Positions 3,927-63,745 are shown, counted from the first letter of the stretch. The stretch: 64,000 nt of DNA from Ophelia neglecta (GCA_965285935.1 CBDIWN010000008.1:310001-374000); one strand, 5' to 3'. Notes: generated by a model not told the origin, from the letters alone. Made by a program: numbers and translations.

Positions 3927-4949
3927 TTACCTCTTGGCGCTCTCTTGCCGGTCTATATTCTCATAATCATCGTTTGTATTTAGTTGTTCGTACATTGGAT
4001 TTCCCTCCTCAGTCAGATTAGCTGTAAAACATAATAAAACATTCCTAAATCCACACTTCATACTTTCATAAACAAAGACAGTTACAGGAAACACATTTTC
4101 AACTGAATATCTAATAATAACGCCCATATTGCAATATTAAGAACCGCCAAGGATATTTATACTTTAGGGAGAACTAAGACACACGTTTAGCCCATATTTC
4201 AAATCACCTATAAGACTATACGAAAGCGTTGTTTAATGTGATAACAGGACATTTGTCGTACACATGTAATTCACAGGTTGTCAACACAATTATATTATGG
4301 TATAAGGGTATTAACTAAGTCTTGTATTTCCTCAATATGTCACATGATAAGAACATGATGTGTGTTAAATATGTGCTTATTTTGTTTAACAACGATTAAC
4401 AGTAGATCGAAGAAGCAGAAAAACCAGATTATTATACCAAAGCTAATATGTGTTTTTAGCTCTCACCATAGCCGGCATGTTCCGAGGACGGTTTCTCATA
4501 CACGTTGCAGTCAGACAATTCAACTTCCTGTGTGGAAGGAACCTGGTTTGCATTTTGGTGCGATAATTCGTTCGTTAAACGTACCCTGTATATAAGAAAA
4601 CACATGACCTGAGAATGCATAAGGAGTATTAGAGCAAATATTTGCACCCAACACTACAGTCAGTCACTACATAGCTATCTATCATATCTAATATATCTAC
4701 TACACTGGACGTAGAGACATTTGGACTAATGTACACAAAAGTTTCGAATATTGTTTTAAATACAAAAGAATTTGCCAAATTGCTTTAAGGAAAATAACAA
4801 GAAAACTTTCATTTTGGACGTCACTTACTTGATTATAAAACAACCAATGACGGTGGCAACAGTGGCAATTATTGCAACAATTGCTATGACGATTCCTGCC
4901 AATGCGCCCGGTGAGAGAGACGTATTTTGCCTTGGTTTATGGAGAGTAG
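3927..4949 (-). CDS. Gene A TM exon and two cytoplasmic exons carrying VYEKP, NPMYEQL and YENI motifs
   Basis: Exons 4949-4829 (phase 1-2), 4585-4467 (phase 2-1) and 4021-3927 have canonical splice sites and join in frame. They overlap ORF-track entries 4456..4647 and 3927..4127. Confidence 0.75.
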
Positions 4950-6851
4950 CTACATTTGAAATTATATCACGTCATATAATGATCCGGTAACATTGCTTCA
5001 AATCTCCCCGGACATGTAGTTGACACATATGTCCCTGTTTTATAATGTAATCTTCCTATTGACCAAATACTTGCATACTGTATACATACTAGCGGCAAAT
5101 GTGAATGCCCTTAATATATCTATTGGTAAGCTGATATAAAATACAAGCGCCGGGCTATCTGCTATAATATACCCTACATGGTACTCTACAAAGGGATTTT
5201 TACATCATTAAAGATATTCTACTGTAGGCCCATTATTGTCCGATTACATATTTTCAAAGCATTGATTGAACTATATTCAAGATCAAAAGAAATAATATCA
5301 TTATCTAAAGACAATGTAACGTATAGTCTACATTGGCAATAAGGGTATTACTGACGTTTCGTCGACATTGCCAGCAAAGATAATAGTTTAACAATGCAAT
5401 TAAATTCAATAACCTTGATTTTGTGCAGCCAAAGTAGTAGCGAAGATAGTCGTGTTTTTGAGACAGTCTTCTTTTATTCCATTCAATTGCCGATAAATCT
5501 TTAAGATGATCCGGTATGTAGAATTGACCGCCAGATTTGTCAATGTTTTGTTATACTTCATAGCAATATTATCTTTTCTGATTTCTATTGTAATCGATTC
5601 AATGTCTGCCCCATTTGCCTCTGAAACGGTGATTTTGTAGCCAAATACAGCGGATGTATTTAATGGAATAGATTTAACGTGTGTCCATTCAATGGTTGAT
5701 CTGTCAGTTTGAACATCGGTAATGCTGACTTTGTTTATGTCCGGATACTCGATGTACGCTGTTTAAATATAAAAACAATAAGATAATTTTTTTTATAATT
5801 ATATAAACATTATTGTGATTACTTTATTCGTCATGAAATATTAATCCTAATAATGTCCCACTACACTAAAACTGATTTTACTTACCTATAGATTGGTTAC
5901 ACAGATCTCCAGCATACCATGTATCGTACGGTGGTAGCTGACAACCGTTACTACATGCGCCACTGTACTGATGACAAGTCATTATGTTATCTACAGCCGC
6001 ACAGTAACTACTACATGGCTGATGTACAGCCCGAGCTGCACACTTTTTCACAAAATGCTCCCAACCTGGTCCCCAGACAGCCCTTAGAGCATGTTCCGTT
6101 GTTCCTCGCACAAACCGATGTCCCATTAACACCATTACAGTGTGTACTGCAGGTTTTGTCACATGTCTTTGAGTAGTAACCGTTTCGATAACCTATAGTA
6201 CAATCTCCTGTTTCTCTGTGACAAACGTTGGGCCCAGTGACTACTTTACAACCATTACTACATTTGTTCTGACACTGGTCTCCAAAGTAAGGGTCCTGAC
6301 AGCCACTCGTGCAACGCCCATCAGTGACGGAACATGACCGAGCATTAGGCTCCTGATCAGTAAGGCAATTCGCACTACATTGCTTGTTACAGTTGATGCC
6401 GAAATGGTCCATATCACATTCTGTAACGTAGATTAAAGTCAATAAGTGAAGGTTTGTTACGGCTTACCTTGAAACTGGATATAACTACTCAGACATTGTG
6501 TATTATATAATCTCCAGTGAAGAGTAACCCGATTTGTTTAGTCTTAGACAGTAATTGGCCTACCTTGGCACTCTGGGTACTTAGGGTAGTTCTTGGGGCA
6601 TTTATTGCAGCCAATAACGGGATCGCAAGACTGACATCGGGTTGTATCACACACTAGAATAACATGTGAATAGTTAACAATAAGAGTGTTGTATTGGGGA
6701 TTATCTTTGTAAACAACTTTTATAAATGGTTCAGATGAGAGTTTGCCTTTGTTTAATATAATCTATTATCTGACTATTGTTATAATAAGTCACGGCATTT
6801 CATTCTGGAACATACATTCAAGGATGACAATGAGTGCGGGTTTTAACATAC

Positions 6852-8144
6852 CAATAGGTCTGTATCCGTGAACTATCACCTCACACAGGGCAAGGTACTG
6901 GACTTGATACCCGCCTGCATTTCTGATAATGGTGACGTATCTGCCGCTTAGAGGCGAGTCACAATATATTGTGTCGCTTGCGTTTCCGGGTACGATTCCT
7001 GTATAATTCTTACAGAGACTTGTTGAATCATAGTATGCTTCGGAACCAACACCAAGGCGAAAATTACCGGTACGCCCTGTGAAAAGATATTCCTGGATAC
7101 AAATACATTGTCGCCAATGACACAATGTCCTCAGAGCGACTCTTACAGTAACCTTGATTCATGCAATGTACAGACGAATATAGAGGTGACAAATAAGTAA
7201 TTTAGTAATCAAAATATGGGTTTTTCATGAGGCCAAAGTTTCCATTATCACAAGTATGTGTAGACATATTTGTAAATAGCTCATCATTGAATATTACGCT
7301 GGTATTTCGTACAACCAATTAGAACTTTCGATCGAACAATTTTCTTAGCGATGTTTACACGAGTGGGTGACTTTTTATGTCATTTCTAAATAGAATCAAT
7401 TCAAATTAATTAATTGAAAATTTAATAACATAAATGCTGTTATTCCGGTTTATTAATAGGAAATACCTCTTTAGCTTTCCACCACATATTCACATCGTGC
7501 GTTAAGTGCGCTTTATAAGAACCGTAGCCAACAATTTAAAATCAAAAGAATCGGCCTCGCTATGGTTTCCCGCAACTGTTTTTGTATTTAATGTGTATCC
7601 CGTACGACTATTCATATGACTAGTTTGCATTTGCTTTCGATCTGTTTATTAGATGAGAACTCGAACCCAAATGACGTCTATTGTGTTTTAATCCTAAAAT
7701 ATATTAGATATTTAAGTAGCACTACTAGCACTGGTAGTCTATTGGTCAACAGTATACACATGAAATACAATTTGGAGTTTAATTTTTTCCCCATGTGAGC
7801 AGCGTGAGAGAGCAGAAAACAATCGCGTATCAGTACTGACGTGATTAATGCTACCATTATGCGTAGATGTTCCAGGTAGAGGTTTAACATTTGTGTCTAG
7901 ATCATCCAGTCGTTTTTTATTTACTTACGGTAAGATGGAGAATGCTCTCTGTTTAAGATGGTGACACTAACAACTGTGTAGATACCCTCTAGATCGACGA
8001 ACCACCAGGCTCTGAGCCCAGATCCAGCATCAGGAACTGCACAATAAATTGACCATGTAGATATTTTACCATCGACGGCCAGATCAGCGGCTGAATTACC
8101 ATATTGCCCACTTTGAAATGCCGGTCTTCCCTTCGCTATATTAC
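6852..8144 (-). CDS. Gene A F-type lectin (fucolectin/F5-8 type C-like) domain, two exons
   Basis: [11 protein letters not shown]...AADLAVDG...CAVP...AWWFVDL...VTILNR...GRYVTI...[10 protein letters not shown] matches the F-type lectin pattern N-x-A-x-G-K/R...Q-S...A-V-D-G...W-W-x-V-D-L...N-R...G-R-Y-V...L-C-E-V. Confidence 0.85.
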
Positions 8145-10039
8145 CTGTTTATACAAAATACTGATAAAACAGACTGTTCATGAATCCTTTTCTATAACGC
8201 TGTCATGAATCACAATATTACATATGTAGTATAAACTTTATCTTTACTCTAGCACACTCATGATAATAGTAACCCTTTTATGTCTTAATGCATCATATTA
8301 AGGTAATGGTAAAAACTTGTATGTATTATTGTGGCTATTGATTAGTCGCGGTAGGGCTATACTTAGAGGCAATGCGGAGGCCTAGACCTTGGGTATTTCT
8401 GAGTGACATAAACCAGAAAATAATCGGCAAGGCAAGGGTTATATCTGAGGGTAAATTTTACGGTTAGGGAAAAGGTTAGAGACAGGCTTAATAGGTCAAG
8501 CGCCCTGTTTTAATCTGGGAATTTACCTCCGCAAGGCTCCGCGCCTCCGCTTTTAATCAAAAGCCATTATTGTTTCATATAAAGTCTGCAACAGTTCATT
8601 ACATGAATGAGAGGACAAATGCATCACTTGAATTAAGAACAACAAAAGCAAAGGAAGTAACTTGACGGCTGAGACAAACAATAACTAAGGATGTTTTACA
8701 AGTACATATTTCTTAGATGTCATTCTTATGGTCATTCCGCCATTATTACACGAAGGACCTCAGAAGAACTTGCAACCGCTAAAATTCTTGGACCTCTGAT
8801 TCAAACAGACATATTTGAGAATGAGCGAATAGGACAAATAGGAGTATAGTTTAGTATATAAAACTTTACATTAAACCCGATAAAAACGATCATCATAATT
8901 ATTTTTGAAACAAAACAAGGCCTTAAAAAGCATCATATTGAACTCGATGCCTATTATAAAAACTTTTCTATTGTAGGGCATAAGTATGTATTCGCATTGC
9001 AGGCCAGTGTGACCGGGGAGGTGGAGGCATTATTTGATAGGCTAGGATTAAGAAAAAGTGCAGGGTGCATAAAAACATTGTTTGGGGCATGTAAATCCTA
9101 CATAAATAAAATCCTGAGCCTTAGCTAGACACAGCGATAGTGTGCTTCTGGAGTCTGCTTCTTCAACAAATGTTGTGCAAAATGACGTAATGGTTACATA
9201 AATATTCTTTAGTACTCAGTATAAATTTTTTTTTAAATACTCTATGCTGACAGTTTTAAATGCTTCCAAATGAATTTTAACAGAAAGTTTTACCAAGGTT
9301 ACACCCAGGCCCTTCTCTCCGTATGATGGCAGGATCATCCCATTCACATTCGCCTCCATCGATACAATCTCCTGTCATCTGATCACAACCCTTGGTACAG
9401 TGACAGGGAAATACACAGTCAGCAGTATTCCCAAACCTACACAGACCTGAGGGGAAAAATCAAGTGGAACATTTATTTGTTGGAATGTTAGACGAAACCA
9501 TGGAACTAACTGGTATTCCCGAACATGCTTGTTCAGGCAGCTCGATTTCTCTTATCGGCAATAGTTCGATCGCAAATGTCCGGAAAAAGAGCAGTACTAA
9601 TTTACAACGAGGATAGTGCTACGCCAAACCCTTCAAGCGTTATCTGCAAATCATAAACATTTTGTCTAGAAGTATACATCAACGAGTAAATCAAATTCAC
9701 ATCAGTGATATATTTTGACACGACAGTGTTATAGCGTTTCCAATGCCATATGGGTGGAACGAGAGTCCCTTTGTTCGCTGAAAGTAACCGAAAGCACCAT
9801 CTTCTTGCAATTCCGTGTAAAGTCGGGTATTCTATTTTTATTAACACCTTTACACTGTTAGTTATTAGTGTAGCTATTCTACCAAGGGGCCTAAAATTTC
9901 ATGAATCTTTTCAAATAAGCCACTTAAAATCATATAAAAAAACTATGATGCAATCGGTACAATTAATTCCACAACCTTGCGCTATTTCCCGGCCTCAGAT
10001 ATATTCTTCTTGTCGGTCTTACCTACCTTCCTCCGTCTG

Positions 10040-10790
10040 ACCGAAGACTAATATTATCCTCCGCAGCGGGATTTCATTCCATTTTCTGATAACTTTGACC
10101 ATAGCGTTTGATCCGTACGAAGTATTCTTTTCTCTCATTCCATTTCCATGCGTCAAATGCACTATACCGGCTTTAGCCAAAGCTATCTAAGCAAAATCCT
10201 CAAACGTGGCCGGCAATAGGCAGCTAATTAATCGGCCCCTTGACCAACACGCTCCTCTGTATTCACTAACCGTTTCTGTAGGCCCTCTGCAACTTTGGAA
10301 TATTGAAGACCTTACTTACACCATATTAAGCTTTAAAAGCGCAGACTTCACAGCAAACTGTCCAACACTTGCCTTGCTAAGGAAAACACAAACAGACGTA
10401 AGCCATGGGCAAGACCAAAATGAACAATTTAACCACGAAGAGCCTTAATATATATGCCGATTACACTCAGATTTATCCGTCTTTACAACTCGTGTCTCCA
10501 AATCTATCGTGCATGGTATCTCAACCATTGAACGTTGTTGGGCTGCTGCCCAGCAATTTCTGACCCAAAACTTTCTAACTAACTCTGAAAAAAAACCGAT
10601 ATATGTCAACTGGACAAATGCCTTGCACACTCCATAAACTGCCTAAAACAATTGACCTACACCGGGAGACACGACAGACCTTGGCTAAACAAGCCAGTAT
10701 AGTACATATATGGGAGTTATGTTTGACAACTCTGTCACCATGGACGCCCAGGGGCCAAGTGCGGTTGATTCTGCCACATAAGTATGACAC
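10040..10790 (+). mobile_element. Decayed L2/CR1-type non-LTR retrotransposon RT fragment in intron 1 of gene A
   Basis: Broken frames read ..TIAFDP.., ..IERCWAAAQQFLTQNFL..SEK.. and ..[13 protein letters not shown].., resembling L2/CR1 RT motifs (AFD; WM..NFLKLN.EKTE; NLGVIFD..L.M). Multiple frameshifts. Confidence 0.6.
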
Positions 10791-11654
10791 TTAACCTATC
10801 CCATGCCTGTGAGTCCCACAATCTTGAAACCCAAGAAATTTACATCCAGAGTTCTAGAAATTCTAGTATGTTTGGAATCCGGTCCTGGTTTACTACGCCC
10901 GGTGTCTTATTACCATAGGCTTTTGAGTCCGGGGACTTAACAGTCTCCTGGATATAAATCCCTAGGGTATTAAACGTGAATTATTAAATACGCTACTATC
11001 TTGCCATTCTGAGTATGCATGCATAAAAACAGACACATATCACTGCCTCTCTGATATGTGCACGCCACGACCACATGCAAAACAGCCACCTCACCTTCGC
11101 TTCTTATGTGTGAAGGCTGTTAAAGCCTTCATCATTACTAATAAATTAGTTTATTTAGTTATTACATTTTGTAAGCACAACTATAAAGTATGCGTTTTAG
11201 ATATGAAATAATTTGTATTTCTCCGCATTGGTCAAAACATAATTCTATTTGGAATTATCAGGCGTCATATCTCTTTATACGCTTAAATCTCCTTGTTCAT
11301 GGAAGTTTGTTTGCAAACACATATTATTCTGGAGATATAACCATATATCGGCTTTTACTATCAACAATTCTGTTTCAAAATCGCTACATCATATTATATT
11401 TTAAAGGAGATAAAAGTTCCTTTCTATGTGCCATTTCATGCGCCATATAATAGAATTTTCTGAGCTGAAAGGTTCTACCGGCAAGTCCTTTGCCTACTTC
11501 AAATACAAAGCGAGGTTCCCTTAATCATGCAGTACAAACATATCATGAGATTTATACCAGGTGTATTCAGGCGCTAGGTGTGTATAGCCTACAGTCATGT
11601 AAATAAACAGATACGAATTGATGGTCTGAAGGGCGCGCTTGGTTAATAGTCTAG

Positions 11655-11870
11655 TGGGGGATCTAGAGATTACCAGGGGTCTCTGGCGGGTCTAGATGCA
11701 GGCAGAGCCCGAGAGGTTTTCAGAGCCCCTTTGGAGGATCTAGAGGTAGTAGGTGCCATCTGGCGGATTGATAGGTCATTAGAGTTCCCTGACGGATCTA
11801 GAGGTTATCAGAGTCCCTGGCGGCAGCCTAGATCTTCCGAAACCCCTTGCGGAGTCATAGGGAGCCACAA
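11655..11870. repeat. Degenerate ~30-bp tandem repeat (ccctggcggatctagaggtt core) in intron 1; copies at 46270-46490 and 48525-48745
   Basis: Recurring gatctagag and ctggcgg motifs. The block is present in each intron-1 copy that spans this position. Confidence 0.55.
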
Positions 11871-13329
11871 CTTCACATTTTGCACCAAAATGGTCATTCA
11901 TGATGATGAATATCCTAAATTTCTGACGGAGACATTTCATAGATCCCGACAGCGTTATTGGATTTTAAAAAATACAAACGTTTCTTTTTTGGACGTGACA
12001 CTAATACAATCCTTTCCTGAATTCTCCCCCCCCCCACTGTCACCCCTAACCCTCGCGCCGTTTTCAATTAGTGGGAAGCATCCGCTCCTAGTTACGAATC
12101 AGATCCACAACACACTGGTTAACATACGACATTAATATTAATGTACGACTTTAAATTCCAAGAGTGGTGATAGGAAAATTTAATGTCTTATTCATTGGAA
12201 CGGACACCTCCATTTTCAATATGTTGTCTATATAGTGTCACGATTTCCGTTGTGACCTGTGAACATGTATATTGACACCAAGTCCACAACTAATTGTAAA
12301 AGCATTCGTGACCCAAAAAATATTTCCATAATAATCACTGCTTAACTTTACGGGTTAACAATAAGGTAAAACAACTACGAATACTTAATAATACCACTGC
12401 CAACAACCCGGCGATCGAGAAATACCAATAAGTTCAAAACAAGAACATATCTACTAACCTGTCTGAGCGGTAACTCTTGTAAGAAAAACAGTGAAACTGA
12501 CCAGCAAACAAATGTAAATGATAGGAGACATTATCGAATTGCACGTTCACACACCTGCGTGAGTGTGTTTATTGTGAACACTATGACAGATAGAAGTGAC
12601 TTACAGGTATGCCTACATTAAATACGAATATTAATAATGATATTTACTTCCTGGTTTCCGAGGGGTCGCCTGAAAGTAAATACACCAGCCCACATCCCGT
12701 TAAACAAACATACTTTATGGCTGAAGAATTACATGTTTACAGTCATGCTATGTATTTTCAATACATAATAAATAATGTTGCATGCTCCTAAAATTGTAGT
12801 ACAATATATATTGAAGTGGAAGTCCCGAGGGTTGTATTTCGAACGCTTTATTACAATATTAAATCAATCGGATATTATTTACTGATGACAGTGACGATTC
12901 CATATTCATTAGTTGAATATAAGGAGATAATCTGTAAGCAATGAAAATAAACATCATGTAAAATACAAATAAGGGGACTAAAAAAAAGATATACACTGGG
13001 GCATGAACTGGATTATAGCTTCTTACCCAATGAAGGACGGGATTATAACGATGATTAAGTCTACAGACATATATGAAACAATGAACCTCCGGAGCAGGGA
13101 CACACACTGCTAGGCGAAGTAAGCACCATTGCCACATGTTTTATAAGTACTGGTATTTTAATATGGCCGTTACCTACATTTATATCGACTATAAATACAC
13201 AGACAAAAAAATAAAGCTAGTATGTTTGTCGATAAATTATTACTTAAATGCAAATTATAATATGAATGGAGATATGATTACGGTCGATAAAGTCTATAGG
13301 CACATAGAGTCATAGGCGGTCTATACATA

Positions 13330-13514
13330 CAGTGGCGATTCCAGGATTTCAGGAGGGGGGGGGGGGTGCTGACAAGGCAAATGTCTGGATTGTCCCCGTT
13401 ACCAACCCTCCGAAAGCACCTTGCTTGGGTCCAGAAATAAGCCCTGGTAAAAGCCCACTTTTGGGCCCCTTGGTTGGGCCCCCTGCCCCCCCCCCCCCCC
13501 CTTAATCCGCGACT
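13330..13514. mobile_element. MITE-like element with poly-G/poly-C arms; duplicate at 16578-16762
   Basis: Starts cagtggcgattccagg plus a G-run and ends with a C-run plus ttaatccgcgact (imperfect terminal inverted repeat). Non-coding, ~185 bp. Confidence 0.45.
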
Positions 13515-13569
13515 TTTGCTACTGTGCAAGAATGTATTCCCGGGGCAAACGCAGTGTAAACGCAGCTAG

Positions 13570-15677
13570 AATTGGATGGGGGATGGGGCCTTATCCTAAT
13601 TGGACGGGGGTGGGGCCTTATTCTAATTGGATAGCGGGTGGGGCCTTATCCTAATTGGATGTGGGGTTGGGCCTTATCCTAATTAGATGGGAGATGGGGC
13701 CTTATCCTAATTTGATGGGGGGTGGGTCCTTATCCTAATTGGATGGGGGATGGGGCCTTATCCTAATTGGATGTGGGTTTGGGCCTTATCCTAATTGGAT
13801 GGGGGATGGGTCCTTATCCTAATTGGATGGGGGTGGGGCCTTATTCTTATTGGATAGGGGGTGGGGCCTTATTCTAATTGGATGTGGGGTTGGGCCTTAT
13901 CCTTATTGGATGTGGGGTTGGGCCTTATCCTAATTAGATGGGGGATGGGGCCTTATCCTAATTGGATGAGGGATTGGTCCTTATCCTAATTGGATGGGGG
14001 ATGGGGCCTTAGCCTAATTGGATGGGGGATGGGGCCTTATCTTTATTGGATAGGGATGGGGGATGGGTCCTTATCCTAATTGGATGGGGCTTGGGTCCTT
14101 ATCCTAATTGGATGTGGGGTGGACCCTTATCCTAATTGGATGTGGGTGGGGCCTTATCCTAATTGGATGGGGGTGGGGCCTTATCCTAATTGGATGGGGG
14201 TGGGGTGGGGGGGGGGGGCTTATACTAATTGGATGGGGATGGATCCTTATCCTAATTGGATGGGGGATGGGGCCTTATTCTAATTGGATGGGGTTTGGGG
14301 CCTTATCCCAATTGGATAGGGATGGGGCCTTATCCTAATTGGATGGAGATGGGGCCTTATCCTAATTAGATGTGGGGTTGGGCCTTATCCTAATTGGATG
14401 GGGGATGGGGCCTTATCCTTATTGGATCGGGGATGGGGCCTTGTCCTCATTGGATGGGGATGGGTCCTTATTCTCATTTGATGGGGATGGTGCCTTATCC
14501 TAATTAGATGTGGGGTTGGGCCTTATCCTAATTGGATGGGGGATGGGGCCTTATCCTAATTGGATGGGGATGGGGCCTTATCCTAATTGGATGGGGGATG
14601 GGGCCTTATCCTAATTGGATGGGGGGTGGGTCCTTATCCTAATTGGATGTGGGGTGGACCCTTATCCTAATTGGATGGGGGTGGGGCCTTATCCTAATTG
14701 GATGGGGGTGGGGTGGGGGGGGGCTTATACTAATTGGATGGGGATGGATCCTTATCCTAATTGGATGGGGGATGGGGCCTTATTCTAATTGGATGGGGTT
14801 TGGGGCCTTATCCCAATTGGATAGGGATGGGGCCTTATCCTAATTGGATGGAGATGGGGCCTTATCCTAATTAGATGTGGGGTTGGGCCTTATCCTAATT
14901 GGATGGGGGATGGGGCCTTATCCTTATTGGATGGGGGATGGGGCCTTGTCCTCATTGGATGGGGATGGGTCCTTATTCTCATTTGATGGGGATGGTGCCT
15001 TATCCTAATTAGATGTGGGGTTGGGCCTTATCCTAATTGGATGGGGGATGGGGCCTTATCCTAATTGGATGGGGATGGGGCCTTATCCTAATTGGATGGG
15101 GGATGGGGCCTTATCCTAATTGGATGAGGGGTTTGGCCTTATCCTAATTGGATGGGGGATGGGTCCTTATCCTAATTGGATGGGGGGTGGGTCCTTATCC
15201 TAATAAGATGGGGGATGGGTCCTTATCCTAATTGGATGTGGGGTTGGGCCTTATCCTAATTGGATGGGGGATGGGTCCTTATCCTAATTGGATGGGGGGT
15301 GGGTCCTTATCCTAATAAGATGGGGGATGGGTCCTTATCCTAATTGGATGTGGGGTTGGGCCTTATCCTAATTGGATGGGGATGGGGCCTTATCCTAACT
15401 GGATGGGGATGGGGCCTTATCCTAATTTGAAGGGGGATGGGGCCTTATCCTAATTGGATGAGGGGTTTGGCCTTATCCTAATTGGATGGGGGATGGGTCC
15501 TTATCCTAATTGGATGGGGGGTGGGTCCTTATCCTAATAAGATGGGGGATGGGTCCTTATCCTAATTGGATGTGGGGTTGGGCCTTATCCTAATTGGATG
15601 GGGATGGGGCCTTATCCTAACTGGATGGGGATGGGGCCTTATCCTAATTTGAAGGGGGATGGGGCCTTATCCTAATT
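13570..15677 (+). repeat. G-rich 27-28-bp satellite/minisatellite array 1 (~75 units; consensus CCTTATCCTAATTGGATGGGGGATGGGG)
   Basis: Directly visible tandem units with diagnostic variants. Confidence 0.98.
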
Positions 15678-16817
15678 ACGTATCGACATTCCGAAGCTCT
15701 ACGCCAATATATTAGTGACTCAAAATGAACCGAACATTTCCTAAATACTAAATAGGGTGCTGTTATTACATGCGGGGCGGTTTAGTTTTACTCCAAACCC
15801 CTGGAACCGGCCTTTTTTTATCGACCGTGTGTTGTCCTGTTTAAAGTCAGTTTGCCTGTTCAACTGTTTAATAAGATTTTATTAATTGGCATAGGTATTA
15901 TATCTGCAGGTGACCATAATTGCACAGACCCATCCAGGGCATCGTTTACATTGTGCAGATTTGCCAAGCAAAGACTATTGCAACTTTATAATGCGAGAAA
16001 CAGAAGAAAAGAAATATCATAAAACTATTCAAACCTTATAGTTTTATTGCATTCCATTGGCAGGTTCATAATATAAACGTATGTGGATTGGTCAGCCATT
16101 TTTATGATGAAAATATATAATTTTTGCACCCAACCATTTTGCCACCCAACCAGTTGTGACCCAACGAATTTGGCGAAGATATTATATCTACAGGTGACCA
16201 CTATGGAACAGATCTATTCAAGGCATCATTTTTCAGACTTGTCAGCCAGCAGACCATTGCTGGTGACATTTTATAATGGTTGGAACAGATGTACAAGATT
16301 AAGTTTATTTCATATACATGTATAGTAGACTAAATTGGGACCAAACCATTTTGGCACTGTATATTATGTATATAAGTGACCATTTGGACATGCCCATTCA
16401 TAGCCTTTATATACAAATTTTGTAAACATCACAGGCAGCCGGGCATTGGACGTTTTAAGTTTAACTAGGTGAAACAGAGAAAAATTATTACTTAAATGCA
16501 AATTATAATATGAATGGAGATATGATTGCGGTCGATAAAGTCTATAGGCACATAGAGTCATAGGCGGTCTATACATACAGTGGCGATTCCAGGATTTCAG
16601 GAGGGGGGGGGGGGGGTGCTGACAAGGCAAATGTCTGGATTGTCCCCGTTACCAACCCTCCGAAAGCACCTTGCTTGGGTCCAGAAATAAGCCCTGGTAA
16701 AAGCCCACTTTTGGGCCCCTTGGTTGGGCCCCCTGCCCCACCCCCCCCCTTAATCCGCGACTTTTGCTACTGTGCAAGAATGTATTCCCGGGGCAAACGC
16801 AGTGTAAACGCAGCTAG

Positions 16818-24765: not shown

Positions 24766-24838
24766 CTGTCTGAGAAGTAACTCTTGTAAGAAAAACACTT
24801 GAACTGACCAGCAAACAAATGTAAATGTTAGGAGACAT
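24766..24838 (-). other. Orphan signal-peptide exon with its upstream region (alternative first exon for gene A, or relic of a deleted paralog)
   Basis: Intact 73-nt exon [24 protein letters not shown](G)|gttagt. Intron homology stops at ~24640 and I found no exon-2 homolog between 12531 and 24640. Confidence 0.8.
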
Positions 24839-49509: not shown

Positions 49510-49619
49510 TATCGATTTGCACGTACAAACACCTCTGTAAGTGTGTTTATTGTGAACTCTATGCCAGATAGAAGTGACTTACAGGTATGCCTACATTAAA
49601 TACGAATATTAATAATGAT

Positions 49620-49806
49620 ATTTACTTCCTGGTTTCCGAGGGGTCGCCTGAAAGTAAATACACCAGCCCACATCCCGTTGAACAAACAAACTTTATGGCT
49701 GAAGAATTACATGTTTACAGTCATGCTATGTATTTTCAATACATAATAAATAATGTTGCATGCTCCTAAAATTGTATTACAATGTATATTGAAGTGGAAG
49801 TCCCGA
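49620..49806 (-). promoter_or_regulatory. Candidate promoter motifs upstream of gene B exon 1: ETS core (CAGGAAGT) and Rel/NF-kB-like site
   Basis: acttcctgg lies ~115 bp upstream of the ATG and ggaagtcccg (rc CGGGACTTCC) at ~49796-49805. Similar motifs occur in the other module copies (CGGGATTTCC at 669-678). Motif match only. Confidence 0.3.
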
Positions 49807-55800: not shown

Positions 55801-55849
55801 GCAAGGGCTTCATGGTTATAATCGCAAAGGAAGTTAGTACGGCAGGTAA

Positions 55850-58800
55850 CTACTTAAAGTTTCCATACTGCTCGTTCCTTGTAATATACTCCATTGCAAT
55901 ACAATGTAAGAAACGATATTGATCCTGTTAAGAAATGAAAACATTCACTTTGACTTTAACTTTATCTTTGAATACGTGCATAAGATAACTGATTAATAAA
56001 TAGCCCACCTTCTTTGTACATTTACATTGATGAAAATAAACCGACATTTTAATATTGTAGATTAGTGTACTAATGATACAAAAGAAATGTCCGTCACATT
56101 TACGAAAACTCTTACCGTCAATGCACATATTAGTAATAGTACTTACCAAAGTGTTGACAAATTGTTGTCTGTGGAGGGAAACAACTCTGACAGCAAGAAA
56201 GACGTCCACCTCGCGGTCTTCTTTCATCTTCTCTAGCATATAATGTGCTGCGCATATCATTCCACTGTGGCTGGCACCGTCTCTGTAATATACAAGTAAG
56301 TAGTGGCATGTTAATTAAGCCCGCGAGGTGCTTTAAGGTGATCAATACTTACCTCTATCGATGAGAGGTGAGATGAAAGTTTAGAGGGACATATGAAAGC
56401 GCTAACAGCTGATCAATTAAACAGCCTCCCCCCCCCCCATCACCATCACCACCAACCCCTAATTAAGCGTCAGTGTCTCACTAATAACGAACAAGCATAG
56501 TGGTATATATGCTAAAAAGTGTGGAGCATCCTTCAATAATTCATATTTTGTATGTCACTTAGATTTTACAAATTACAGCTGCCTATTTATAAATGGGTGT
56601 TTGGCAACAAACCCCTCATTGGCGCTTTATTTCAATCCTAAAGAGAAACACTTGTCTTAAGAATAACATAAAGATGATCCTAGTTTATTCATTTGTTATT
56701 TGTCTTTTCCCGTTTTATTTTTACGAAAACAGTTGACGTGTTTATAACTTACTTGCATTGGATAACAATTTTTCCAGCTTCAGATTGTCGTTGCCACTTC
56801 TGAAGGCGTTCTAACAGATTTAAAGTGTCATCCATGTCTGGCAAATTCGGGTTATCTGGCCGCTGCTTGAACAAAATATGGCGGACGCTCACTGCCTTGT
56901 TCTGGAACTAAGAATTTAACCAATAGTATTAAAATATCGTTGTTGTATTTGAGAATATACTTTCCTATACATCTATAAGTTGACATATCAACATAAATAT
57001 AATAAAATCCAGAGACTAACACTTGATGAAAAAGACACTGTGAACTTTCTCTCTTCTATGGCATCTTTCTCGTCTTCGTCTTTTGAATCGATGCACACCT
57101 CAAGATCACCAAACTTCTTAACGTCACCTTGTTGAAATTCCCAGTAATTGGGACAATCCTGATGATAGAAATTGATTATCGAAACAAGTTTGCGTATTTT
57201 GACGGACTTAAATTTGATTACCTAATTTCTGGCATTTCGTATTGCACTATTTGTTTTATTTGAACACGGCCGCCTACCTCGGAGTTAGGGGACGTTGTGT
57301 CCACAGTTATCACAGTGTGGCAGTTTTGTTCATACACCAAACGCCAGAAGTCAACAACAGTAGCAGGGAGTGGCAGCTGTGTTGCAATGAATGTCTTCTC
57401 CGCAAGAAAACTCTAATAAATGGAGTAAACGAAATGCATTCCACCAATATGTGGCTTTTAGTTCAGGAAAATACGAGAAATACAAAAGAAAGAAAAAAAT
57501 GTTATCAATTGAGCATTATCCAATAAATCACTATTAAAAGAACATGATTAATGGAAAATACGACTAGAAATATACCATGCGTTAATAATCATTCAGCAAT
57601 GTAAAAAGAAGATTAATGGTATGGGGAAAAATTTTAATGTAGGTTGTATTCATTTAAACCAATACATACGTTGACCACAACGGCATTGATATAGTCATTG
57701 GTCCCCGGACATCTTGTAGATAGATACAACCTGTGTTTATTATCTATCGAAGAAAACAAAAGAAAACAGCCGTTGAATTAATAAATCTGATTGTGCATTG
57801 GTTCCATATACAAATATCTAAGATTAGTTATATTATCATAACCCATGCAGTATCTATTATCTGAAACTATGTACCTGGCACTATATCAGCATCTCGATTC
57901 TTCCGCCTGTTTTCCTTACTCAGAGCACTAAGTTTGTCGTCTGACACCTTATGTTGTTTCATTTTGGAAAGAATCTGAAATATAAGTAAGTCATGCCATT
58001 ATTATTATCGACTCATAATGCTACAAAAGAGGAACTTATCAGATAGGCGGAATATATGGAAGCATAAACCAAACAAACTGTTCACAGTGATTCAAAATGG
58101 CTAATGCTACACTGACTTCATAATCGATACCCTCTGTTAGCAAGGTAACATAAATTGTGAGCATGCCGTTCGTTACTGTCATCATATAAGTGTCATATTG
58201 TTATAAATATAGTGTTTCTTATCGTTTCTATAAACCACATGCGATTTGAACACTTTTGTTTAGTATATGTGTGTGCATTAAAAGAAGCATGTGTTAATAT
58301 AATTGATACAAAATTACATCATTGGAATAAATTGTTTTACACAACAAATATTAATAAACTGAAATAGTTCCCATAAATTATTAATTGCTGAAATTGTGCA
58401 GCAAAACCACTATGTATAAAATGCTAACTTTAAATTGTTCTTCGATGGGTATTTCGTTGGAATATTCGTTTCCGCCGACCAGTTGTGTGTACCTCTCAGG
58501 ATACACGTTACATGGAATGGCCGTCTGTCCTTGCTGGTATGCATCTAGCAGTGCCTCGTAGATAAATATATATTGTGGCTAAAAGCAGAAGAAATATAAC
58601 TTAATATATCTATTGTGTAGGAGTCAGTGATAATAAGATAGGTAGACCAAATTGATAATGAATTATGAAATTGAATATCCTAATAAAAGAGTCCTCGCAT
58701 GGGGATTTATAATATTACTATTTTGCTTTCCTCCTAAATATATGTCAAAAGTAATGTTGAAATGTCACGAATGCACATAATTAATCAGGCGTTTAGGATA

Positions 58801-61800
58801 AGGCATGGCTAATCAACGTTTACTCGGCATATGGGTTTACAAACTCCACATCCGACTTTCCATAATCATTTGACTTTAGCTGAACACGATAATCTTTCTG
58901 GTAACAACAGTGTTCCTTTAAAAGCTTGCCATATCCTCAAAGTAGTATTATCTCAGCAGGAAGTCTTACCAATGTTTGAACCATGTCCATACGTTCATTT
59001 CTGAGCTGAGTTACCAGTTTAAAGACATCTACTTTTCCTTCTCTTTTCATTTGGTCCAGGAGATAGTCCAGCGCAATCAATGTCCCTGTACGGCCTATTC
59101 CAGCACTGGGAGGGATAAAGGAAGTATGCTCATGGTGACATTATTGTGCCTTGATAAATAAACTCGCAAAATAATGCCTTAGAACATTGTAAGCTTCAAA
59201 CATTTTATCTTACCTGCAGTGGACTATAATTGGCCCTGTTCCTTCTCCGTCAAATGATCTCAGTTTTCGCCTGAGTGCCAAAAGAGGAAATGCGTGGTCT
59301 GGGGCCTGCTTGTCTGGCCAGGAAAGGAACTGCAAGTGCTTTACTGTCCTTTGTTCATTCTACAATATGCAAAAAATAGGGTTTTCTTACTTTAAATTCT
59401 AATTGTGTTGATCAACCTCAAACGGTGACATGCTCTCGTTAAGTGGCGCTAAAAAACGAAAGCTTTCAGAAATCGGAACATATTAAGTTTTTGTTCTGAA
59501 TTTTTCCATCCAAGAAAAATTCAAGCAAAAATAATTGCAAGAGATCTGATTTTGCAATACTATATTACATAATTTAGCATAGACCAGGCTATGATAACGT
59601 GCATTCGATATAAATTCTGTCAAATGAACATCCACATAGTAATCATTTTACAAATGGAAGAAACCGCAGCTTGTTTCAACACTACCGACTGTGTCCGACT
59701 CTGACATAATACTCTCCACAACATTTTAAATATATGTATCAAAATAATGGCATAACAAATACTAATCTCTTCCGTCTTTGTCAGCGGTAACCGTTTGCAT
59801 CAAACCGTACAGGGTTATCAATATAGTGTCACTATTTTTGTTCTCGCGTGACAGAGCAATTCGTTTCCGTCACCATTAAAAAAAGTGTAATTCCGCTCGT
59901 ATCAGGATATAAAAAATCACATGCACACGATTTCCATCTCTTGCCTCATACTGGCATTTGACTGTTTGAGGGTCAAAAATACTGCAAGATTCACGCAGAA
60001 TAAATTTGTGCAAATCTTTGTCCAGTAATTGAAGTTTTTACAATTGGCAATCTGTGATCATGTTCTATAAATACAGAATTCGACCAGAAAAAAAACAGGT
60101 CATGATTTATCGACCACATTGGGTAATATAACATGATAAGATGTGTTGCACAAGCAGAAAGCAGTTATTCTCAGTACAGGCATTTCGTTTCCAGATATTT
60201 AACACAGTAAATCAAAAACGCAAACAGCATCTACCACAAGAGTAGAATGGTAGGTCATATGTGTAACAAAGAATCTGCGTGTCGATGACACAAGTCACCA
60301 AAGCCTGCCTAAGTTATCAGGTATATTTAGGAGATAAATATCGATTTGTTATACACTATAGTGATGAAGGTTTAGATGAAGAATTTGACAGTTGCTTTAC
60401 GTTGCGAAAGCTGTCATAACCAAGTGACTTTAATGTGCTGCCAACGTGCTAGAATAGGCGGTTCAACAACAAAATGCCTAGTATTGTTGTGAACTATGTG
60501 ACATGTGGTACTTTAGATGTATACAATTAGAAACGGAAATATGATAAATGCGAGTGGATATCCGGCAGGCAATGCCAAGTCCCTAGCCGAGAACAGTCCA
60601 TTAAATCGTTACGAAATCATCAGGAGCCAGTAGCCGACGTGAGGCAGCAACAATTTAAACTAAGTGACGAAGAATATTACTTCCGGACATATATAATAAG
60701 CAAAATATGCTTTACAAGACCTTCACTCATTTCTGTCTGATGTTGTTTAATAGTATAACGTGTACCAACATGCGGGTTCACAATATGGTATAACTAATAG
60801 GAAATGTTGGTCACGTGTATCTTAACTGTCGTTAAATTCTGCGATTTCTCGCAGTTATTTTTCTTCTAAGCAATACGGGCCATTCCACAATGCATAGAAG
60901 AATGAATATTTTCCTTTCACTTAGGGCCAAGTTAATCATATGAAATTTAAGATAACTGTAAAGAAAATCATACCCCTTTCTTTATGGTGATGAGTGTCAG
61001 AGTGTAGTCGGCATATGAATCACAGGCCGTGGTAGTCACTGTAATATCATCATAGGTTACGACCTCTCCAACTGCCTCGGGCCAATACTGGGCACACTTT
61101 GTCTGTTTTGAATAAAACTAATGTCAGTTGCCAATGCTTAAGTAAACACGGTCTAATGATATTAAATACGTCACAAAAATACAAAACAAAAATACAATTC
61201 AACAATACATTTTATTTTGTTCACACTGACAAACCTTGGTGAGCTCTTTAATTCGTGTTGCCATAACAATACGATTTGACTTTAACTGCCAGACCATCGA
61301 CCACAATGCGTTCACTGTGTGCGGCTTGGGTCCTGAAATAAAAAGAAAAGAATAATCTAACTTAGTTGCTATTTGGAATTTGAACGATATTATTATTAGT
61401 ACTAGTGGTATATTTTGATGAGTTTTTAGCTTTTAGAAAATGTTTCAAAGTAATAATAATTTCTAATTATAAACACACCTATATTTTCGTGAAATTGCAA
61501 TCGTGTTATGTGACATATATATGTCCGAATACTTATATGAGTTTGTTCGAGATTTGTTCACTCACCTTGTGTGGCCACGTAATGGTTTTTCTTATTAGGA
61601 TAACCCTAAAAAAGATACGTACCTTCGACTGTGCTTTAGTTTATAAATGACTTTACAGTTTGAGATATATACCAAACTTCAGTAAAACTGTTTCAATATA
61701 GTAATCGTGTTTACCGTTATGAAGCTGGCGTTGATGTAGTCAGAGTTATCAATAGTAGTTTCCAGAGCCACTCGAGAATAGTCGTCTATAAAAATGTAAC

Positions 61801-63745
61801 TCATCGTGTAATATATGAATAAAATACTTTAAATCATTAAGTTTTAGCAAGCTAGAGACTTTCGCAAACTTGCATGTTATCGCAAAAATATCAACTAGCA
61901 AAAATTTCCTGTTGGTGATTCCGTCACGCAACCCTTCTTTTAAGCAGTAATCAGGCTCTATCGTCATCGTCGCTCAGCCAGGTGGACAATGCAGGGTGAA
62001 ATATGACTGTGGAAATTTTCTGGTTCCCTAAGATACCTTGTTCCTCAGTATACTTTGACTGTCATTGAGTACATTTTACCATTTTTCGTTGTCAAACTTT
62101 GAAATATGAAGGTTATCAAAGAAAACATACAGGCCCTGATATTCTTAAAGCGATCCCTAGCTATGTTTTGTTTCTGCTTGGCCACGTCACATGAACTCAG
62201 TTCTCCATTAGGCACGTCCTAAAACAGCAGATTAAGTAATTAATGGAAAAAAGCATGAAAAGAAAGATGAAAACAGAAGGACAAACATCCGTATGATAAA
62301 TGAGAGAACACAAATCATATATCATAGCATCGATGCAAAATTAGGTAGCTGGAAAGAACCAATATGTTTTTTAATTCAGACCATCCAACTTTAAGATATC
62401 ACACTCGCTGAATGTCTTAAAATGAAGGTTAAGAATATTGGAACATTATTTTATTTTAGTTTCAAATATTGCCCAGTAATTAATAAAGATCTATTTTCGT
62501 GGCTAAGCTTGGTTTCTTTTCTGCCGCTAACATATATATAACAAATGACCAGTTATTGAAACCCGCAGTGTATATACAATGAATGTTTTGGGTAATAGTG
62601 CGTATGCATGAAACATTTGTCCTTCATTACGCATGTGTGACCCAATGAGTCAATGCCACAACAGTGGTAGTCTAAAAACTGCAGTGGGATAAGACACCAA
62701 GATATGAAAGCTTACATGGTGGATCAACCGATGTCATGAACTGTTTGAAGTTTAATTACCAGATAAAAACATTAATAGATACATCAATACCAAACGATAC
62801 ACGTAAAGGACGCATAATTTACTCAATGTTTTAATTGGAAACTAAAAGGAGCATAACTCCTGGCCGTTGACAATGGTTGCCTAGATTGAGGGCGCGGTTT
62901 TCATTTTCAAAATGCTACTTACTTCAAATTCCTTTTTCAAACCATCCTTAGTGTATTTCCGTGCCCCAATATATACTTCTAGATCATCTTCTTTGACGCA
63001 AGTTCCTTCTTCAAGACGTTTTGTAGCCGGGAAGTCATAGTATATCGTATTAGGGTTCTCATCTACGTTACCTCCAAAGCATGGATTGTCTACTTCCTCC
63101 ACAACTTTCGTTTCGGCGAGTTCATTATCAGGTCCTTTGGAATGGTAAAAAAGAACATTAGTCGCATACTGTCCATAGCACCTGACATGCTTTCTAAAAA
63201 TGACACTATACAGCGAAGCGAGTGTTAACATAAATTGATTTCATATGAAAAAACGAGAGTAGGTACCCGGCACACAAACAATATCATTTATCAAGAAAAG
63301 TCAATTAATTTGGCCCGATACAATCAGGAACCGAAAGCCATAGGCCTGGAATTACTTACCGGAAGGCCTTCTAAATGACGAATAGCTTCTTCCCTTTGGA
63401 GGTATCTCCTCCATTTTAGCATTAGCATTATCTTTCGCTTTCGTGCGTCGTTTCCTATTATGAATTTTCAAACACACCGTTTTGATTGGGTAATGTAAAT
63501 AGCGCTCGTAAGGGTTTTTATTACTCATTAGTGATTACGAAGCACTCTCAGTGTCGATGCTTTCTAACATCATTATGGGATATAATGCGTCTGAGAAACA
63601 ACGTACGGGGTGATAATTTCTTAATTCACCAACCTGAGAAAAACGACAAGAATTACCACCAGGATGGCTATAGTCAGGAACGCTGCTATTGATCCGGTAA
63701 TAGGTCCGACCAGGCTTAACGAAGCTGGGGGATCGACACTAGGTT
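55850..63745 (-). CDS. Gene C (5'-partial): paralogous receptor-type tyrosine-protein phosphatase, TM through D2
   Basis: Exons 63745-63634 (TM), 63454-63360, 63134-62923, 62218-62131, 61785-61715, 61605-61566, 61332-61235, 61102-60974, 59359-59214, 59105-58970, 58578-58429, 57974-57875, 57743-57670, 57412-57278, 57158-57021, 56901-56753, 56282-56147, 55924-55850. Every exon length equals gene B's. [13 protein letters not shown] and YGNFK* are retained. Not every codon was checked. The ectodomain lies beyond the window. Confidence 0.92.

What the first reader, a model, noticed from the sequence alone, without database searches (positions are those of the whole stretch)
3927..63745. Candidate paired-receptor locus: one lectin-EGF-FN3 ectodomain wired either to tandem phosphatase domains or to a short Tyr-motif tail
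Seen in sequence: genes A and B share exons 1-7 and much intron sequence. After the FN3 exon, A uses different TM and tail exons ending NPMYEQL-NTNDD-YENI, while B and C continue into D1/D2 PTP domains. Established: vertebrate paired receptors (KIR, LILR, SIRP, Siglec) pair near-identical ectodomains with activating or phosphatase-recruiting tails in tandem clusters. Inference: this could be an invertebrate analog in which the inhibitory arm carries its own phosphatase. At least three genes, and probably a fourth, are arrayed head-to-tail.
Basis: partly seen in the sequence, partly recalled or inferred. Interest (0 to 1): 0.9.

Follow-up and report, generated by a model that had tools for sequence, protein, structure and literature searches.

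The report
Lectin receptors with swappable signalling tails
This stretch of a probably molluscan genome holds four neighbouring members of a large family of sugar-binding surface receptors whose outer part is joined either to a built-in tyrosine phosphatase or to a short tyrosine-motif tail, which recalls vertebrate paired immune receptors; the short-tail copy in this window is broken, but intact ones lie nearby.

Summary
All genes are on the minus strand. B (31413-49509) is an intact 25-exon, 1303-aa receptor phosphatase: signal peptide, F-type lectin, EGF, FN3, TM, then D1 and D2. C (exons 8-25 in the window) is intact too. A (3927-12531) shares exons 1-7 with B, then uses three other exons for a TM and a 70-aa tail. 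That tail holds an ITAM (YANL-x7-YEQL) overlapping an NPxY, plus two more tyrosines.

The fourth gene, Z, is a pseudogene.

The pattern is family-wide. At least 42 genes lie on two contigs: 19 short-tail, 21 phosphatase-tail and 2 hybrids. Eight short-tail genes are open from exon 2 to the stop. All four tail tyrosines are kept in 15-16 of 16 copies.

Tail type is scrambled on the EGF-exon tree. Three separate recombination joints link ectodomain and tail modules. So the architecture is real, maintained and modular.

Opposing signalling, expression and ligand remain untested, because no RNA data could be reached. Earlier reports of this scan describe the same family on other windows of this genome.

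The parts
55850..63745 (-). Gene C, exons 8-25: TM, juxtamembrane region, PTP D1 and D2, stop codon. Its ectodomain exons lie beyond the window end.
   Evidence: B's exons projected onto C give 18 exons, all AG/GT, 694 aa with no internal stop, 94% aa identity to [12 protein letters not shown] and WPD are present.
31413..49509 (-). Gene B, a complete receptor tyrosine phosphatase of 25 exons and 1303 aa. Exons: e1 49437-49509 (signal peptide), e2 44952-45104 (Cys-rich), e3 42674-42889 and e4 41614-41838 (F-type lectin), e5 41170-41259, e6 40305-41030 (EGF repeats), e7 39831-40175 (FN3), TM exon 39408-39519.
   Evidence: Spliced model with canonical sites and no internal stop. Pfam hits to F5/8C, fn3 and Y_phosphatase. 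F-type lectin structures FBP32 and eel agglutinin matched by e3 and e4.
34024..37449 (-). B phosphatase domain D1 (exons 11-18). It carries KCAQYWP, WPD and the signature [11 protein letters not shown], which is split across exons 16 and 17.
   Evidence: The nearest solved chains are RPTP epsilon and alpha D1.
31413..33548 (-). B phosphatase-like domain D2 (exons 19-25). The signature reads VIQCKDGASHSG, with His in place of the catalytic Arg, so it is probably inactive.
3927..12531 (-). Gene A, the short-tail member. Exons: e1 12459-12531, e2 9294-9446, e3 7929-8144, e4 6852-7076, e5 6564-6653, e6 5886-6420 (broken), e7 5414-5758, t1 4829-4949 (TM), t2 4467-4585, t3 3927-4021.
   Evidence: All exons have AG/GT sites and the phases are consistent.
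5886..6420 (-). A's EGF exon: 535 nt against 726 nt in B, a 191-bp deletion that shifts the frame. The first stop is TAG at 6011-6013 (codon 389). A conserved Cys is also replaced by Tyr.
   Evidence: Alignment (columns 481-671). Skipping this exon would keep the frame and give 478 aa; this is inferred, not observed.
5430..5442 (-). Old recombination joint inside A's FN3 exon. Upstream of it A and seven sister short-tail genes carry phosphatase-type bases; from it onward they carry short-tail-type bases.
   Evidence: 18 diagnostic sites switch between nt 317 and 329 of the exon in 7 of the 8 genes and one site earlier (nt 311-317) in the eighth.
3927..4585 (-). Cytoplasmic tail exons t2 and t3 of A. 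Motifs: NVYEKP, then YANL-x7-YEQL (ITAM consensus, with NPMY overlapping its second half), then x5-YENI.
   Evidence: The four Tyr are kept in 16, 16, 15 and 16 of 16 open paralog tails.
24766..24838 (-). Orphan copy of exon 1 (signal peptide) with its ATG and GT donor, inside a copy of the promoter region. No gene body follows it before the satellite.
233..305 (-). Exon 1 of gene Z, the next short-tail gene. The rest of Z lies upstream of the window at C16:302010-308704. It is a pseudogene.
   Evidence: There are frameshifts in e3, e6 and t1.
13570..18999 (.). 28-bp satellite of about 192 copies, lying between the orphan exon 1 and gene A's promoter.

Best explanation
SHOWN. The window is a slice of a large tandem family of type I receptors. 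The ectodomain is a signal peptide, a Cys-rich module, an F-type lectin domain, a Cys knot, EGF repeats and FN3. Every ectodomain exon is phase 1-1. After the FN3 exon comes one of two cytoplasmic cassettes:
- (P) a TM followed by a tandem tyrosine phosphatase. D1 has all its catalytic motifs. D2 lacks the catalytic Arg.
- (S) a different TM followed by a 70-aa tail with four conserved tyrosines. These include an ITAM (YxxL-x7-YxxL) whose second half doubles as NPxY.

Both cassettes are under purifying selection. Cassettes and ectodomain exons have been recombined repeatedly. There is a common joint in intron 7, a second joint inside the FN3 exon that founded A's clade of eight genes, and a third joint in hybrid genes. 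In the window, B and C are intact P genes. A is an S gene disabled by a frameshifting deletion. Z is a dead S gene.

INFERRED. On binding a fucosylated or related glycan ligand, S receptors are phosphorylated by a Src-family kinase. They then recruit a Syk/Shark-type kinase through the ITAM and a PTB adaptor of the GULP/Ced-6 type through NPxY. This would drive phagocytosis or activation. P receptors carry the same kind of ectodomain, so they would be drawn into the same contacts rather than excluded from them. There they would dephosphorylate the S tails or their kinases and set the threshold. In effect this is a paired system whose inhibitory arm carries its own phosphatase.
For: Architecture and intactness.

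Family size and interleaving of S and P genes.

Eight S genes are open from e2 to the stop, and five of them also have exon 1.

Selection:
- Tail exons are 89.2% identical against 83.0% for tail introns; exons exceed introns in 110 of 120 pairs.
- Tail dN/dS is about 0.5, and the four Tyr are kept in 15-16 of 16 tails.
- B versus C cytoplasmic dN/dS is 0.22.
- The N-terminal half of the lectin domain (e3) has the highest dN/dS, 0.85-0.92.

Module exchange:
- On the EGF-exon tree, tail type needs 8 changes against 9.5 for shuffled labels. There are starred S-P sister pairs, including the neighbours C16:257472 and C16:274441.
- A single S clade is rejected (delta lnL 160, p-AU 0.0001).
- There is a sharp P-to-S switch at nt 317-329 of the FN3 exon in A's clade.
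- The hybrid joint is, and the common intron-7 joint.

Mechanistic plausibility:
- The ITAM consensus Yxx[I/L]x(6-9)Yxx[L/I] is taken from PMC9546547.
- An ITAM-Syk pathway has been shown in an oyster (PMC6994640).
- Draper is ITAM-phosphorylated, recruits Shark, and is triggered when a transmembrane phosphatase is excluded from the contact (PMC6219719).
Against: About 8 of 34 close family members carry disabling lesions in the exons examined, so part of the cluster is decaying.

A receptor phosphatase need not be inhibitory. CD45 activates Src kinases (own knowledge).

Ectodomains of S and P neighbours are 72-94% identical per exon in amino acids, not near-identical, so a shared ligand is not assured.

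The fucose-binding triad is only partly kept in B and A.

Co-expression of S and P genes in one cell is unknown.
Confidence: 0.55

Rival explanations
1. Both gene types are real and functional but not functionally paired. P genes would be ordinary adhesion or guidance-type receptor phosphatases. S genes would be Draper/MEGF10-like engulfment or adhesion receptors. The shared ectodomain would then reflect only common descent and gene conversion inside a tandem array, with no opposing signalling on a common ligand.
For: Gene conversion or unequal crossing-over alone can scramble ectodomain exons in a tandem array. Ectodomain identity between neighbours is moderate. The FN3 exon next to the tail still tracks tail type, and a single S clade is not rejected there (p-AU 0.18). 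No expression data are available.
Against: Both tail types persist side by side in two subfamilies about 25% apart in DNA. New S/P chimeras have been fixed and then duplicated: A's clade has 8 genes. This is easier to explain if having both tails on a given ectodomain is useful.
Confidence: 0.3
2. The locus is a decaying birth-and-death cluster of receptor phosphatase genes. Short-tail copies such as A would be truncated duplicates that landed in front of unrelated exons and are not made as proteins.
For: A has a 191-bp frameshifting deletion and a lost Cys. Z has three frameshifts. Further nonsense or frameshift copies exist. An orphan exon 1 and a 5.4-kb satellite sit in the array.
Against: Eight S genes have uninterrupted reading frames with canonical splice sites in all nine exons examined. 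Tail exons are better conserved than tail introns. The four Tyr are kept in 15-16 of 16 tails. The splice phases of FN3, t1, t2 and t3 fit in every copy.
Confidence: 0.1
3. One gene makes both tails by alternative 3' exon choice, as Draper isoforms do.
For: The idea is suggested by Draper-I and Draper-II (own knowledge) and by the fact that every ectodomain exon ends in phase 1.
Against: No t1-t3 exons occur within or downstream of B or C. Each S gene has its own promoter region and exon 1. S and P genes are 10-25 kb apart.
Confidence: 0.03

Closest known systems
Vertebrate paired receptors (KIR, LILR, SIRP, Siglec, Ly49)
   Same: Tandem clusters of genes with similar ectodomains and two kinds of cytoplasmic part of opposite signalling sign. 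Evolution by duplication, gene conversion, tail swapping and frequent pseudogenes.
   Different: The ectodomain here is F-type lectin, EGF and FN3, not Ig or C-type lectin. The ITAM sits in the receptor's own tail, with no charged TM residue and no adaptor. The other arm carries a tandem phosphatase in cis instead of an ITIM that recruits SHP-1 or SHP-2. Per-exon ectodomain identity is 72-94% aa.
CED-1 / Draper / MEGF10 / Jedi-1 engulfment receptors
   Same: EGF-rich ectodomain, single TM, and a tail combining NPxY with an ITAM or YxxL. Draper recruits Shark after Src42a phosphorylation and is triggered when a transmembrane phosphatase is excluded (PMC6219719). Jedi-1 uses GULP (PMC4055271).
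   Different: No EMI domain was found at the N-terminus (Pfam). A lectin head and an FN3 domain are present. The family is a lineage-specific tandem expansion. Draper's inhibitory form is a splice isoform (own knowledge), whereas here it is a separate gene with a built-in phosphatase.
Receptor tyrosine phosphatases with tandem D1-D2 (RPTP alpha/epsilon, CD45, LAR)
   Same: TM followed by an active-looking D1 ([14 protein letters not shown]) and a degenerate D2. The best solved matches for the signature exon are RPTP epsilon and alpha.
   Different: The ectodomain architecture, the large tandem expansion, and the existence of sister genes in which the whole phosphatase part is replaced by an ITAM tail.
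Hydractinia Alr family (PMC9546547)
   Same: An invertebrate gene cluster of surface receptors and pseudogenes in which some tails carry ITAMs and others ITIMs, discussed as an NK-like balance.
   Different: Alr has Ig-like ectodomains and very diverse tails, with no phosphatase domain in cis.
Oyster CgIgR-Syk pathway (PMC6994640)
   Same: A molluscan surface receptor with its own cytoplasmic ITAM that recruits Syk and promotes phagocytosis.
   Different: CgIgR has an Ig ectodomain, is a single gene, and has no phosphatase-tailed twin described.
F-type lectins (striped bass FBP32, eel agglutinin; PDB 3CQO, 1K12)
   Same: Both halves of the lectin domain match these chains (E 1.5e-7 and 2.7e-6). 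The CxH, WWxVDL, NR and LCEVxVxG landmarks align.
   Different: Here the domain is one module of a membrane receptor. The position after the NR motif varies between paralogs, and the Asp of the binding triad is present in some and replaced in B and A.

Membership tests
Classical receptor-type protein tyrosine phosphatase (tandem D1-D2) | Single TM followed by two PTP domains | tested here: met
   Pfam PF00102 hits on exons of both domains. Full spliced models of B and of C exons 8-25.
Classical receptor-type protein tyrosine phosphatase (tandem D1-D2) | D1 with the HC(X5)R signature, the WPD loop and the Q loop | tested here: met
   [14 protein letters not shown] and QTL-PQY are present in B and C. 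The KNRY loop reads RDRF, a Tyr-to-Phe change.
Classical receptor-type protein tyrosine phosphatase (tandem D1-D2) | Phosphatase activity | not testable with these tools
   Needs an enzyme assay of D1.
F-type lectin domain | Sequence similarity to solved F-type lectin domains over both halves of the fold | tested here: met
   e3 matches 3CQO, 1K12, 3LE0 and 2J1R. e4 matches 3CQO. Pfam gives only sub-threshold F5/8C-type hits.
F-type lectin domain | His / Arg-x-Asp / Arg-or-Lys fucose-binding motif (motif recalled from the literature) | tested here: inconclusive
   The His and the first Arg are conserved in all copies. The Asp position is D in some paralogs (NREDSP, NRDDSP) but H or E in B, A and others.
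ITAM-bearing receptor | Yxx[I/L]-x(6-9)-Yxx[L/I] in the cytoplasmic tail (consensus as given in PMC9546547) | tested here: met
   YANL-x7-YEQL in A and in 15 of 16 open paralog tails. One paralog has Ile in place of the second Tyr.
ITAM-bearing receptor | Tyr phosphorylation and binding of a tandem-SH2 kinase (Syk/Shark) | not testable with these tools
   Needs biochemistry. The presence of Syk in this genome was not tested.
CED-1/Draper/MEGF10 family | N-terminal EMI domain followed by MEGF-type EGF repeats | tested here: not met
   No EMI or other Pfam hit on the N-terminal exon. A lectin domain stands there instead. The EGF exon resembles EGF_laminin / EGF_PEAR1L clusters only in the feature search.
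CED-1/Draper/MEGF10 family | Tail with NPxY plus YxxL or ITAM | tested here: met
   NPMYEQL and the motifs around it.
Vertebrate-type paired receptors | Clustered genes with similar ectodomains but alternative cytoplasmic parts | tested here: met
   Interleaved S and P genes on C16 and C7. Tail type is scrambled on the EGF-exon tree.
Vertebrate-type paired receptors | The activating member has a short tail, a charged TM residue and an ITAM adaptor | tested here: not met
   The S tail carries its own ITAM, and there is no charged residue in the TM span.
Vertebrate-type paired receptors | The inhibitory member carries an ITIM that recruits an SH2 phosphatase | tested here: not met
   P genes carry tandem PTP domains in cis.
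Vertebrate-type paired receptors | Opposite signalling outcomes on the same or related ligand | not testable with these tools
   Needs ligand identification and cell assays.

The most novel reading that the evidence does not exclude
An invertebrate paired-receptor system built from different parts than the vertebrate ones. ITAM/NPxY-tailed lectin receptors and receptor phosphatases share, and keep exchanging, one glycan-binding ectodomain. Ligand contact would therefore bring the phosphatase into the signalling cluster, where the CD45 or Ptp69D type is excluded. This would give a tunable, ligand-matched brake on phagocytic or immune activation.
Probability: 0.35. Interest if true: 0.85.

Novelty: new variant of a known kind. 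Interest (0 to 1): 0.7.

Why it matters
Paired activating and inhibitory receptors are treated as a hallmark of vertebrate innate immunity. They are built on Ig or C-type lectin ectodomains, with ITIMs that recruit phosphatases.

A large, evolving invertebrate family that reaches the same logic by fusing the phosphatase directly to a shared lectin ectodomain would be an independent origin of that logic. It would offer a natural test of kinetic-segregation ideas, because here the phosphatase is co-ligated instead of excluded. It would also give candidate recognition receptors, for pathogen, self or non-self, or gamete recognition, in a phylum without antibodies.

The three mapped recombination joints also show concretely how phase 1-1 exons let signalling tails be swapped.

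Tried and rejected

As a result the rest of C16 and C7, the ectodomains upstream of most P genes, and the distant tail-like exons on C2 could not be read.

Relatives elsewhere. The FN3 exon searched against 1.84 billion protein representatives found only one real relative. It is a 203-aa fragment at 39% identity from a Logan run, on a 1.3-kb contig. The species' own proteins are therefore not in that library, and I did not use the search for homologous proteins.

Domain searches. Pfam found nothing at E <= 0.1 on the EGF exon, the Cys-rich exon or the second lectin exon. The PDB sequence search and the Atlas feature search were used instead. Rfam found nothing in the window.

Literature. Five paper searches found no description of this architecture.

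Alternative splicing of one gene was considered and rejected; see the rival explanations.

Spliced models. Exons were searched one by one by reference. Joined models were only translated inside local scripts to check frames. For the same reason the lectin domain, which spans two exons, could not be folded.

The organism was not identified.
Full report
**What is in the window**

The window is G000:C16:310001-374000, part of a 962,826-bp contig, and contains no N. A self-comparison shows two long minus-strand similarities:
- 5340-12983 with 39762-49972, at 77-94% identity.
- 24633-39756 with 49304-63986, at 85-92% identity.

It also shows a satellite at 13570-18999. That satellite has a 28-bp unit in about 192 copies.

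All genes run on the minus strand in the order C, B, A, Z.

**Gene B**

I mapped exons by reading open frames and splice sites. B has 25 exons, all AG/GT, a 3912-nt coding sequence and 1303 aa with no internal stop. The order of parts is:
- a signal peptide (exon 1, 49437-49509);
- a Cys-rich exon;
- two exons forming a lectin domain;
- a small Cys-knot exon;
- one 726-nt EGF exon;
- one FN3 exon (39831-40175);
- a TM exon and two juxtamembrane exons;
- phosphatase domains D1 and D2.

Exons 2-7 are all multiples of three and all phase 1-1.

Pfam supports fn3, F5/8C-type and Y_phosphatase on single exons. The two lectin exons match solved F-type lectins: FBP32 and eel agglutinin, plus two bacterial fucolectin-related chains (Sm-hPAF, 2J1R) for e3 (E 1.5e-7 and 2.7e-6). 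The EGF exon resembles molluscan EGF_laminin / PEAR1-like clusters in the Atlas feature search.

D1 has KCAQYWP, WPD and [12 protein letters not shown]2 reads VIQCKDGASHSG, with His where the catalytic Arg should be. The nearest solved chains for the signature exon are RPTP epsilon and alpha.

**Gene C**

Exons 8-25 lie at 55850-63745. There are 18 exons and 694 aa, with no stop and 94% identity to B. B versus C gives dN/dS 0.22 over this part. C's ectodomain exons start just past the window end.

**Gene A**

Exons 1-7 correspond one to one with B's, and the introns are similar too. After the FN3 exon (ending at 5414) come three exons unrelated to B:
- t1, 4829-4949, encoding a stalk and the TM;
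- t2, 4467-4585;
- t3, 3927-4021.

The phases fit: 1 into t1, 2 into t2, 1 into t3. All sites are AG/GT.

The 70-aa cytoplasmic part has four tyrosines: NVYEKP, YANL, NPMYEQL and DYENI. YANL-x7-YEQL fits the ITAM consensus Yxx[I/L]x(6-9)Yxx[L/I] quoted in PMC9546547. Its second half is also an NPxY. The spacing to YENI is only five residues. The TM span has no charged residue.

This is a 191-bp deletion (columns 481-671) that shifts the frame and gives TAG at 6011-6013, codon 389. A conserved Cys is also lost. Because all neighbouring exons are phase 1-1, skipping this exon would leave an in-frame 478-aa product. That is a possibility, not an observation. I rate A as about 75% likely to be a pseudogene in this assembly.

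**The fourth gene and the gap between B and A**

Z has exon 1 at window 233-305. Its body lies at C16:302010-308704, with frameshifts in the first lectin exon, the EGF exon and the TM exon.

A further intact-looking copy of the promoter region and exon 1 stands alone at 24766-24838. It lies between B's 3' end and the satellite.

**The family**

Own-genome searches with the tail module, the EGF+FN3 module, a D1 piece and B's TM region show interleaved copies along C16 and on C7:90.45-91.08 Mb. On the DNA I could read, 42 genes have the FN3 exon:

| Type | Description | Genes |
|---|---|---|
| S | short tail | 19 |
| P | phosphatase tail | 13 |
| Q | a more divergent phosphatase-tail subfamily | 8 |
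| H | hybrid | 2 |

By coordinates alone, the divergent subfamily also has short-tail members.

Eight S genes are uninterrupted from exon 2 to the stop, giving 619-728 aa once the 24-aa signal-peptide exon is counted (seen for five; assumed for the other three). Five of them have exon 1, with its ATG and donor, within the DNA held.

About 8 of the 34 closer genes carry a nonsense or frameshift lesion in the exons examined.

**Constraint**

- The four tail tyrosines are kept in 16, 16, 15 and 16 of 16 open tails.
- Tail exons are 89.2% identical against 83.0% for the tail introns. Exons exceed introns in 110 of 120 pairs.
- Tail dN/dS is about 0.5.
- Ectodomain exons give 0.33-0.62, except the first lectin exon at 0.85-0.92. 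That exon carries the loops aligned with the sugar-binding His and Arg of F-type lectins. The residue at the motif's Asp position differs between paralogs.

**Exchange of modules**

On the FN3-exon tree, rooted on Q, three basal clades are all S. Eight S genes, including A, nest inside the P clade with 99/99 support. A single S clade is not rejected there (p-AU 0.18).

On the EGF-exon tree the tail label is essentially random: 8 changes against 9.5 for shuffled labels. There are strongly supported S-P sister pairs, one of them the neighbours C16:257472 (P) and C16:274441 (S), which share the same in-frame EGF deletion. A single S clade is rejected (delta lnL 160, p-AU 0.0001).

Three distinct joints explain this:
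1. S and P consensus sequences stay alike for about 50 nt, patchily to about 100 nt, into intron 7 and then part. This is the common, old joint.
2. In A's clade, 18 diagnostic sites switch cleanly from P-type to S-type between nt 317 and 329 of the FN3 exon (window 5430-5442 in A) in seven of the eight genes and one site earlier in the eighth. This was one recombination that put an S tail behind a P ectodomain and was then duplicated.
3. In two hybrid genes, the P-type TM exon and the first 80 nt or so of the next exon are fused 22-23 nt before t2.

**What it most likely does**

The architecture, its maintenance and its modular evolution are shown. The function is inferred.

The S tail combines the two motifs of the CED-1/Draper/MEGF10/Jedi class. 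Draper's ITAM is phosphorylated by Src42a and binds Shark, and signalling starts when a transmembrane phosphatase is excluded from the contact (PMC6219719). Jedi-1 uses GULP (PMC4055271). ITAM-to-Syk signalling operates in an oyster receptor (PMC6994640).

A receptor phosphatase with the same kind of lectin ectodomain would be pulled into ligand contacts instead of being excluded from them. There it could reset S tails or their kinases.

It has real uncertainty for three reasons. Nothing shows co-expression or a shared ligand. Ectodomains of neighbours are 72-94% identical per exon, not near-identical. And receptor phosphatases can also activate Src kinases (own knowledge).

**Comparison with known systems**

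It works like vertebrate paired receptors but fails their defining features: there is no charged TM residue or adaptor, no ITIM, and no Ig or C-type lectin ectodomain. It shares the tail logic of Draper/MEGF10 but lacks the EMI domain and has a lectin head and FN3.

Its P members are bona fide tandem-domain receptor phosphatases, and its lectin domain is an F-type lectin domain by sequence. The nearest invertebrate parallel in the literature I could reach is the Hydractinia Alr cluster, with ITAM or ITIM tails (PMC9546547). I found no paper describing an F-type-lectin receptor phosphatase family with ITAM-tailed twins.

**Relation to earlier scan notes**

One search shows that this scan has already described the same family on other windows of this genome (s1-736068, s1-739833, s1-733624, s1-730838, s1-734093). 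My results agree with them.

For this window I add the full exon models, A's lesion, the trees with the clade test, the three mapped joints and the selection figures.

**Limits**

There are no RNA data. Only part of the arrays could be read. For P genes other than B, only exons 5-10 were available. Pairwise dN/dS values come from related copies and are not independent. C16 and C7 may be paralogous segments or very divergent haplotypes.

Joined models were only translated in local scripts.

Noticed in passing
window 13570-18999: G-rich 28-bp satellite of about 192 copies (5.4 kb), interrupted by a 1.1-kb spacer at 15678-16817. It causes the strong GC skew seen at 14-20 kb.
   Followed up: partly
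window 24766-24838 (within 24633-25649): Orphan copy of the family's promoter region and signal-peptide exon, with its ATG and GT donor intact but no gene body before the satellite. It could be an alternative first exon for A or a relic of a lost gene.
   Followed up: partly
L036 (C16:233329-236873) and L035 (C7:90656006-90659593): Hybrid genes in which the phosphatase-type TM exon and a truncated next exon are fused 22-23 nt upstream of short-tail exon t2. Splicing from the TM exon straight to t2 would stay in frame. The C16 copy has nonsense mutations; the C7 copy is open in the exons seen.
   Followed up: partly
C16:155487-163499 versus C16:180008-187999, and C16:205634 versus C16:220550: Near-identical, very recent segmental duplicates of whole genes. 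In the first pair one copy differs by a 1-nt deletion in the EGF exon.
   Followed up: partly
C2:112430498-112441118; C16:614160-614640 and 630932-632059; C7:91069189-91069973: Exon-sized matches (72-82%) to the TM and tail exons with no family ectodomain hit nearby in the capped searches. The tyrosine tail cassette may be used by other receptor families.
   Followed up: no
EGF exon across paralogs (e.g. L014, L024, L023, L033): The EGF exon varies in length by whole-repeat, in-frame deletions: 732, 726, 504, 501 and 411 nt. The stalk length of the receptor therefore differs between copies. A's 535-nt version is the out-of-frame case.
   Followed up: partly
L049 (Logan run ERR14113986, 1340-bp contig): The only outside relative found: an FN3 plus TM fragment 39% identical to B's FN3 exon, apparently genomic DNA of another, unidentified species.
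   Followed up: no
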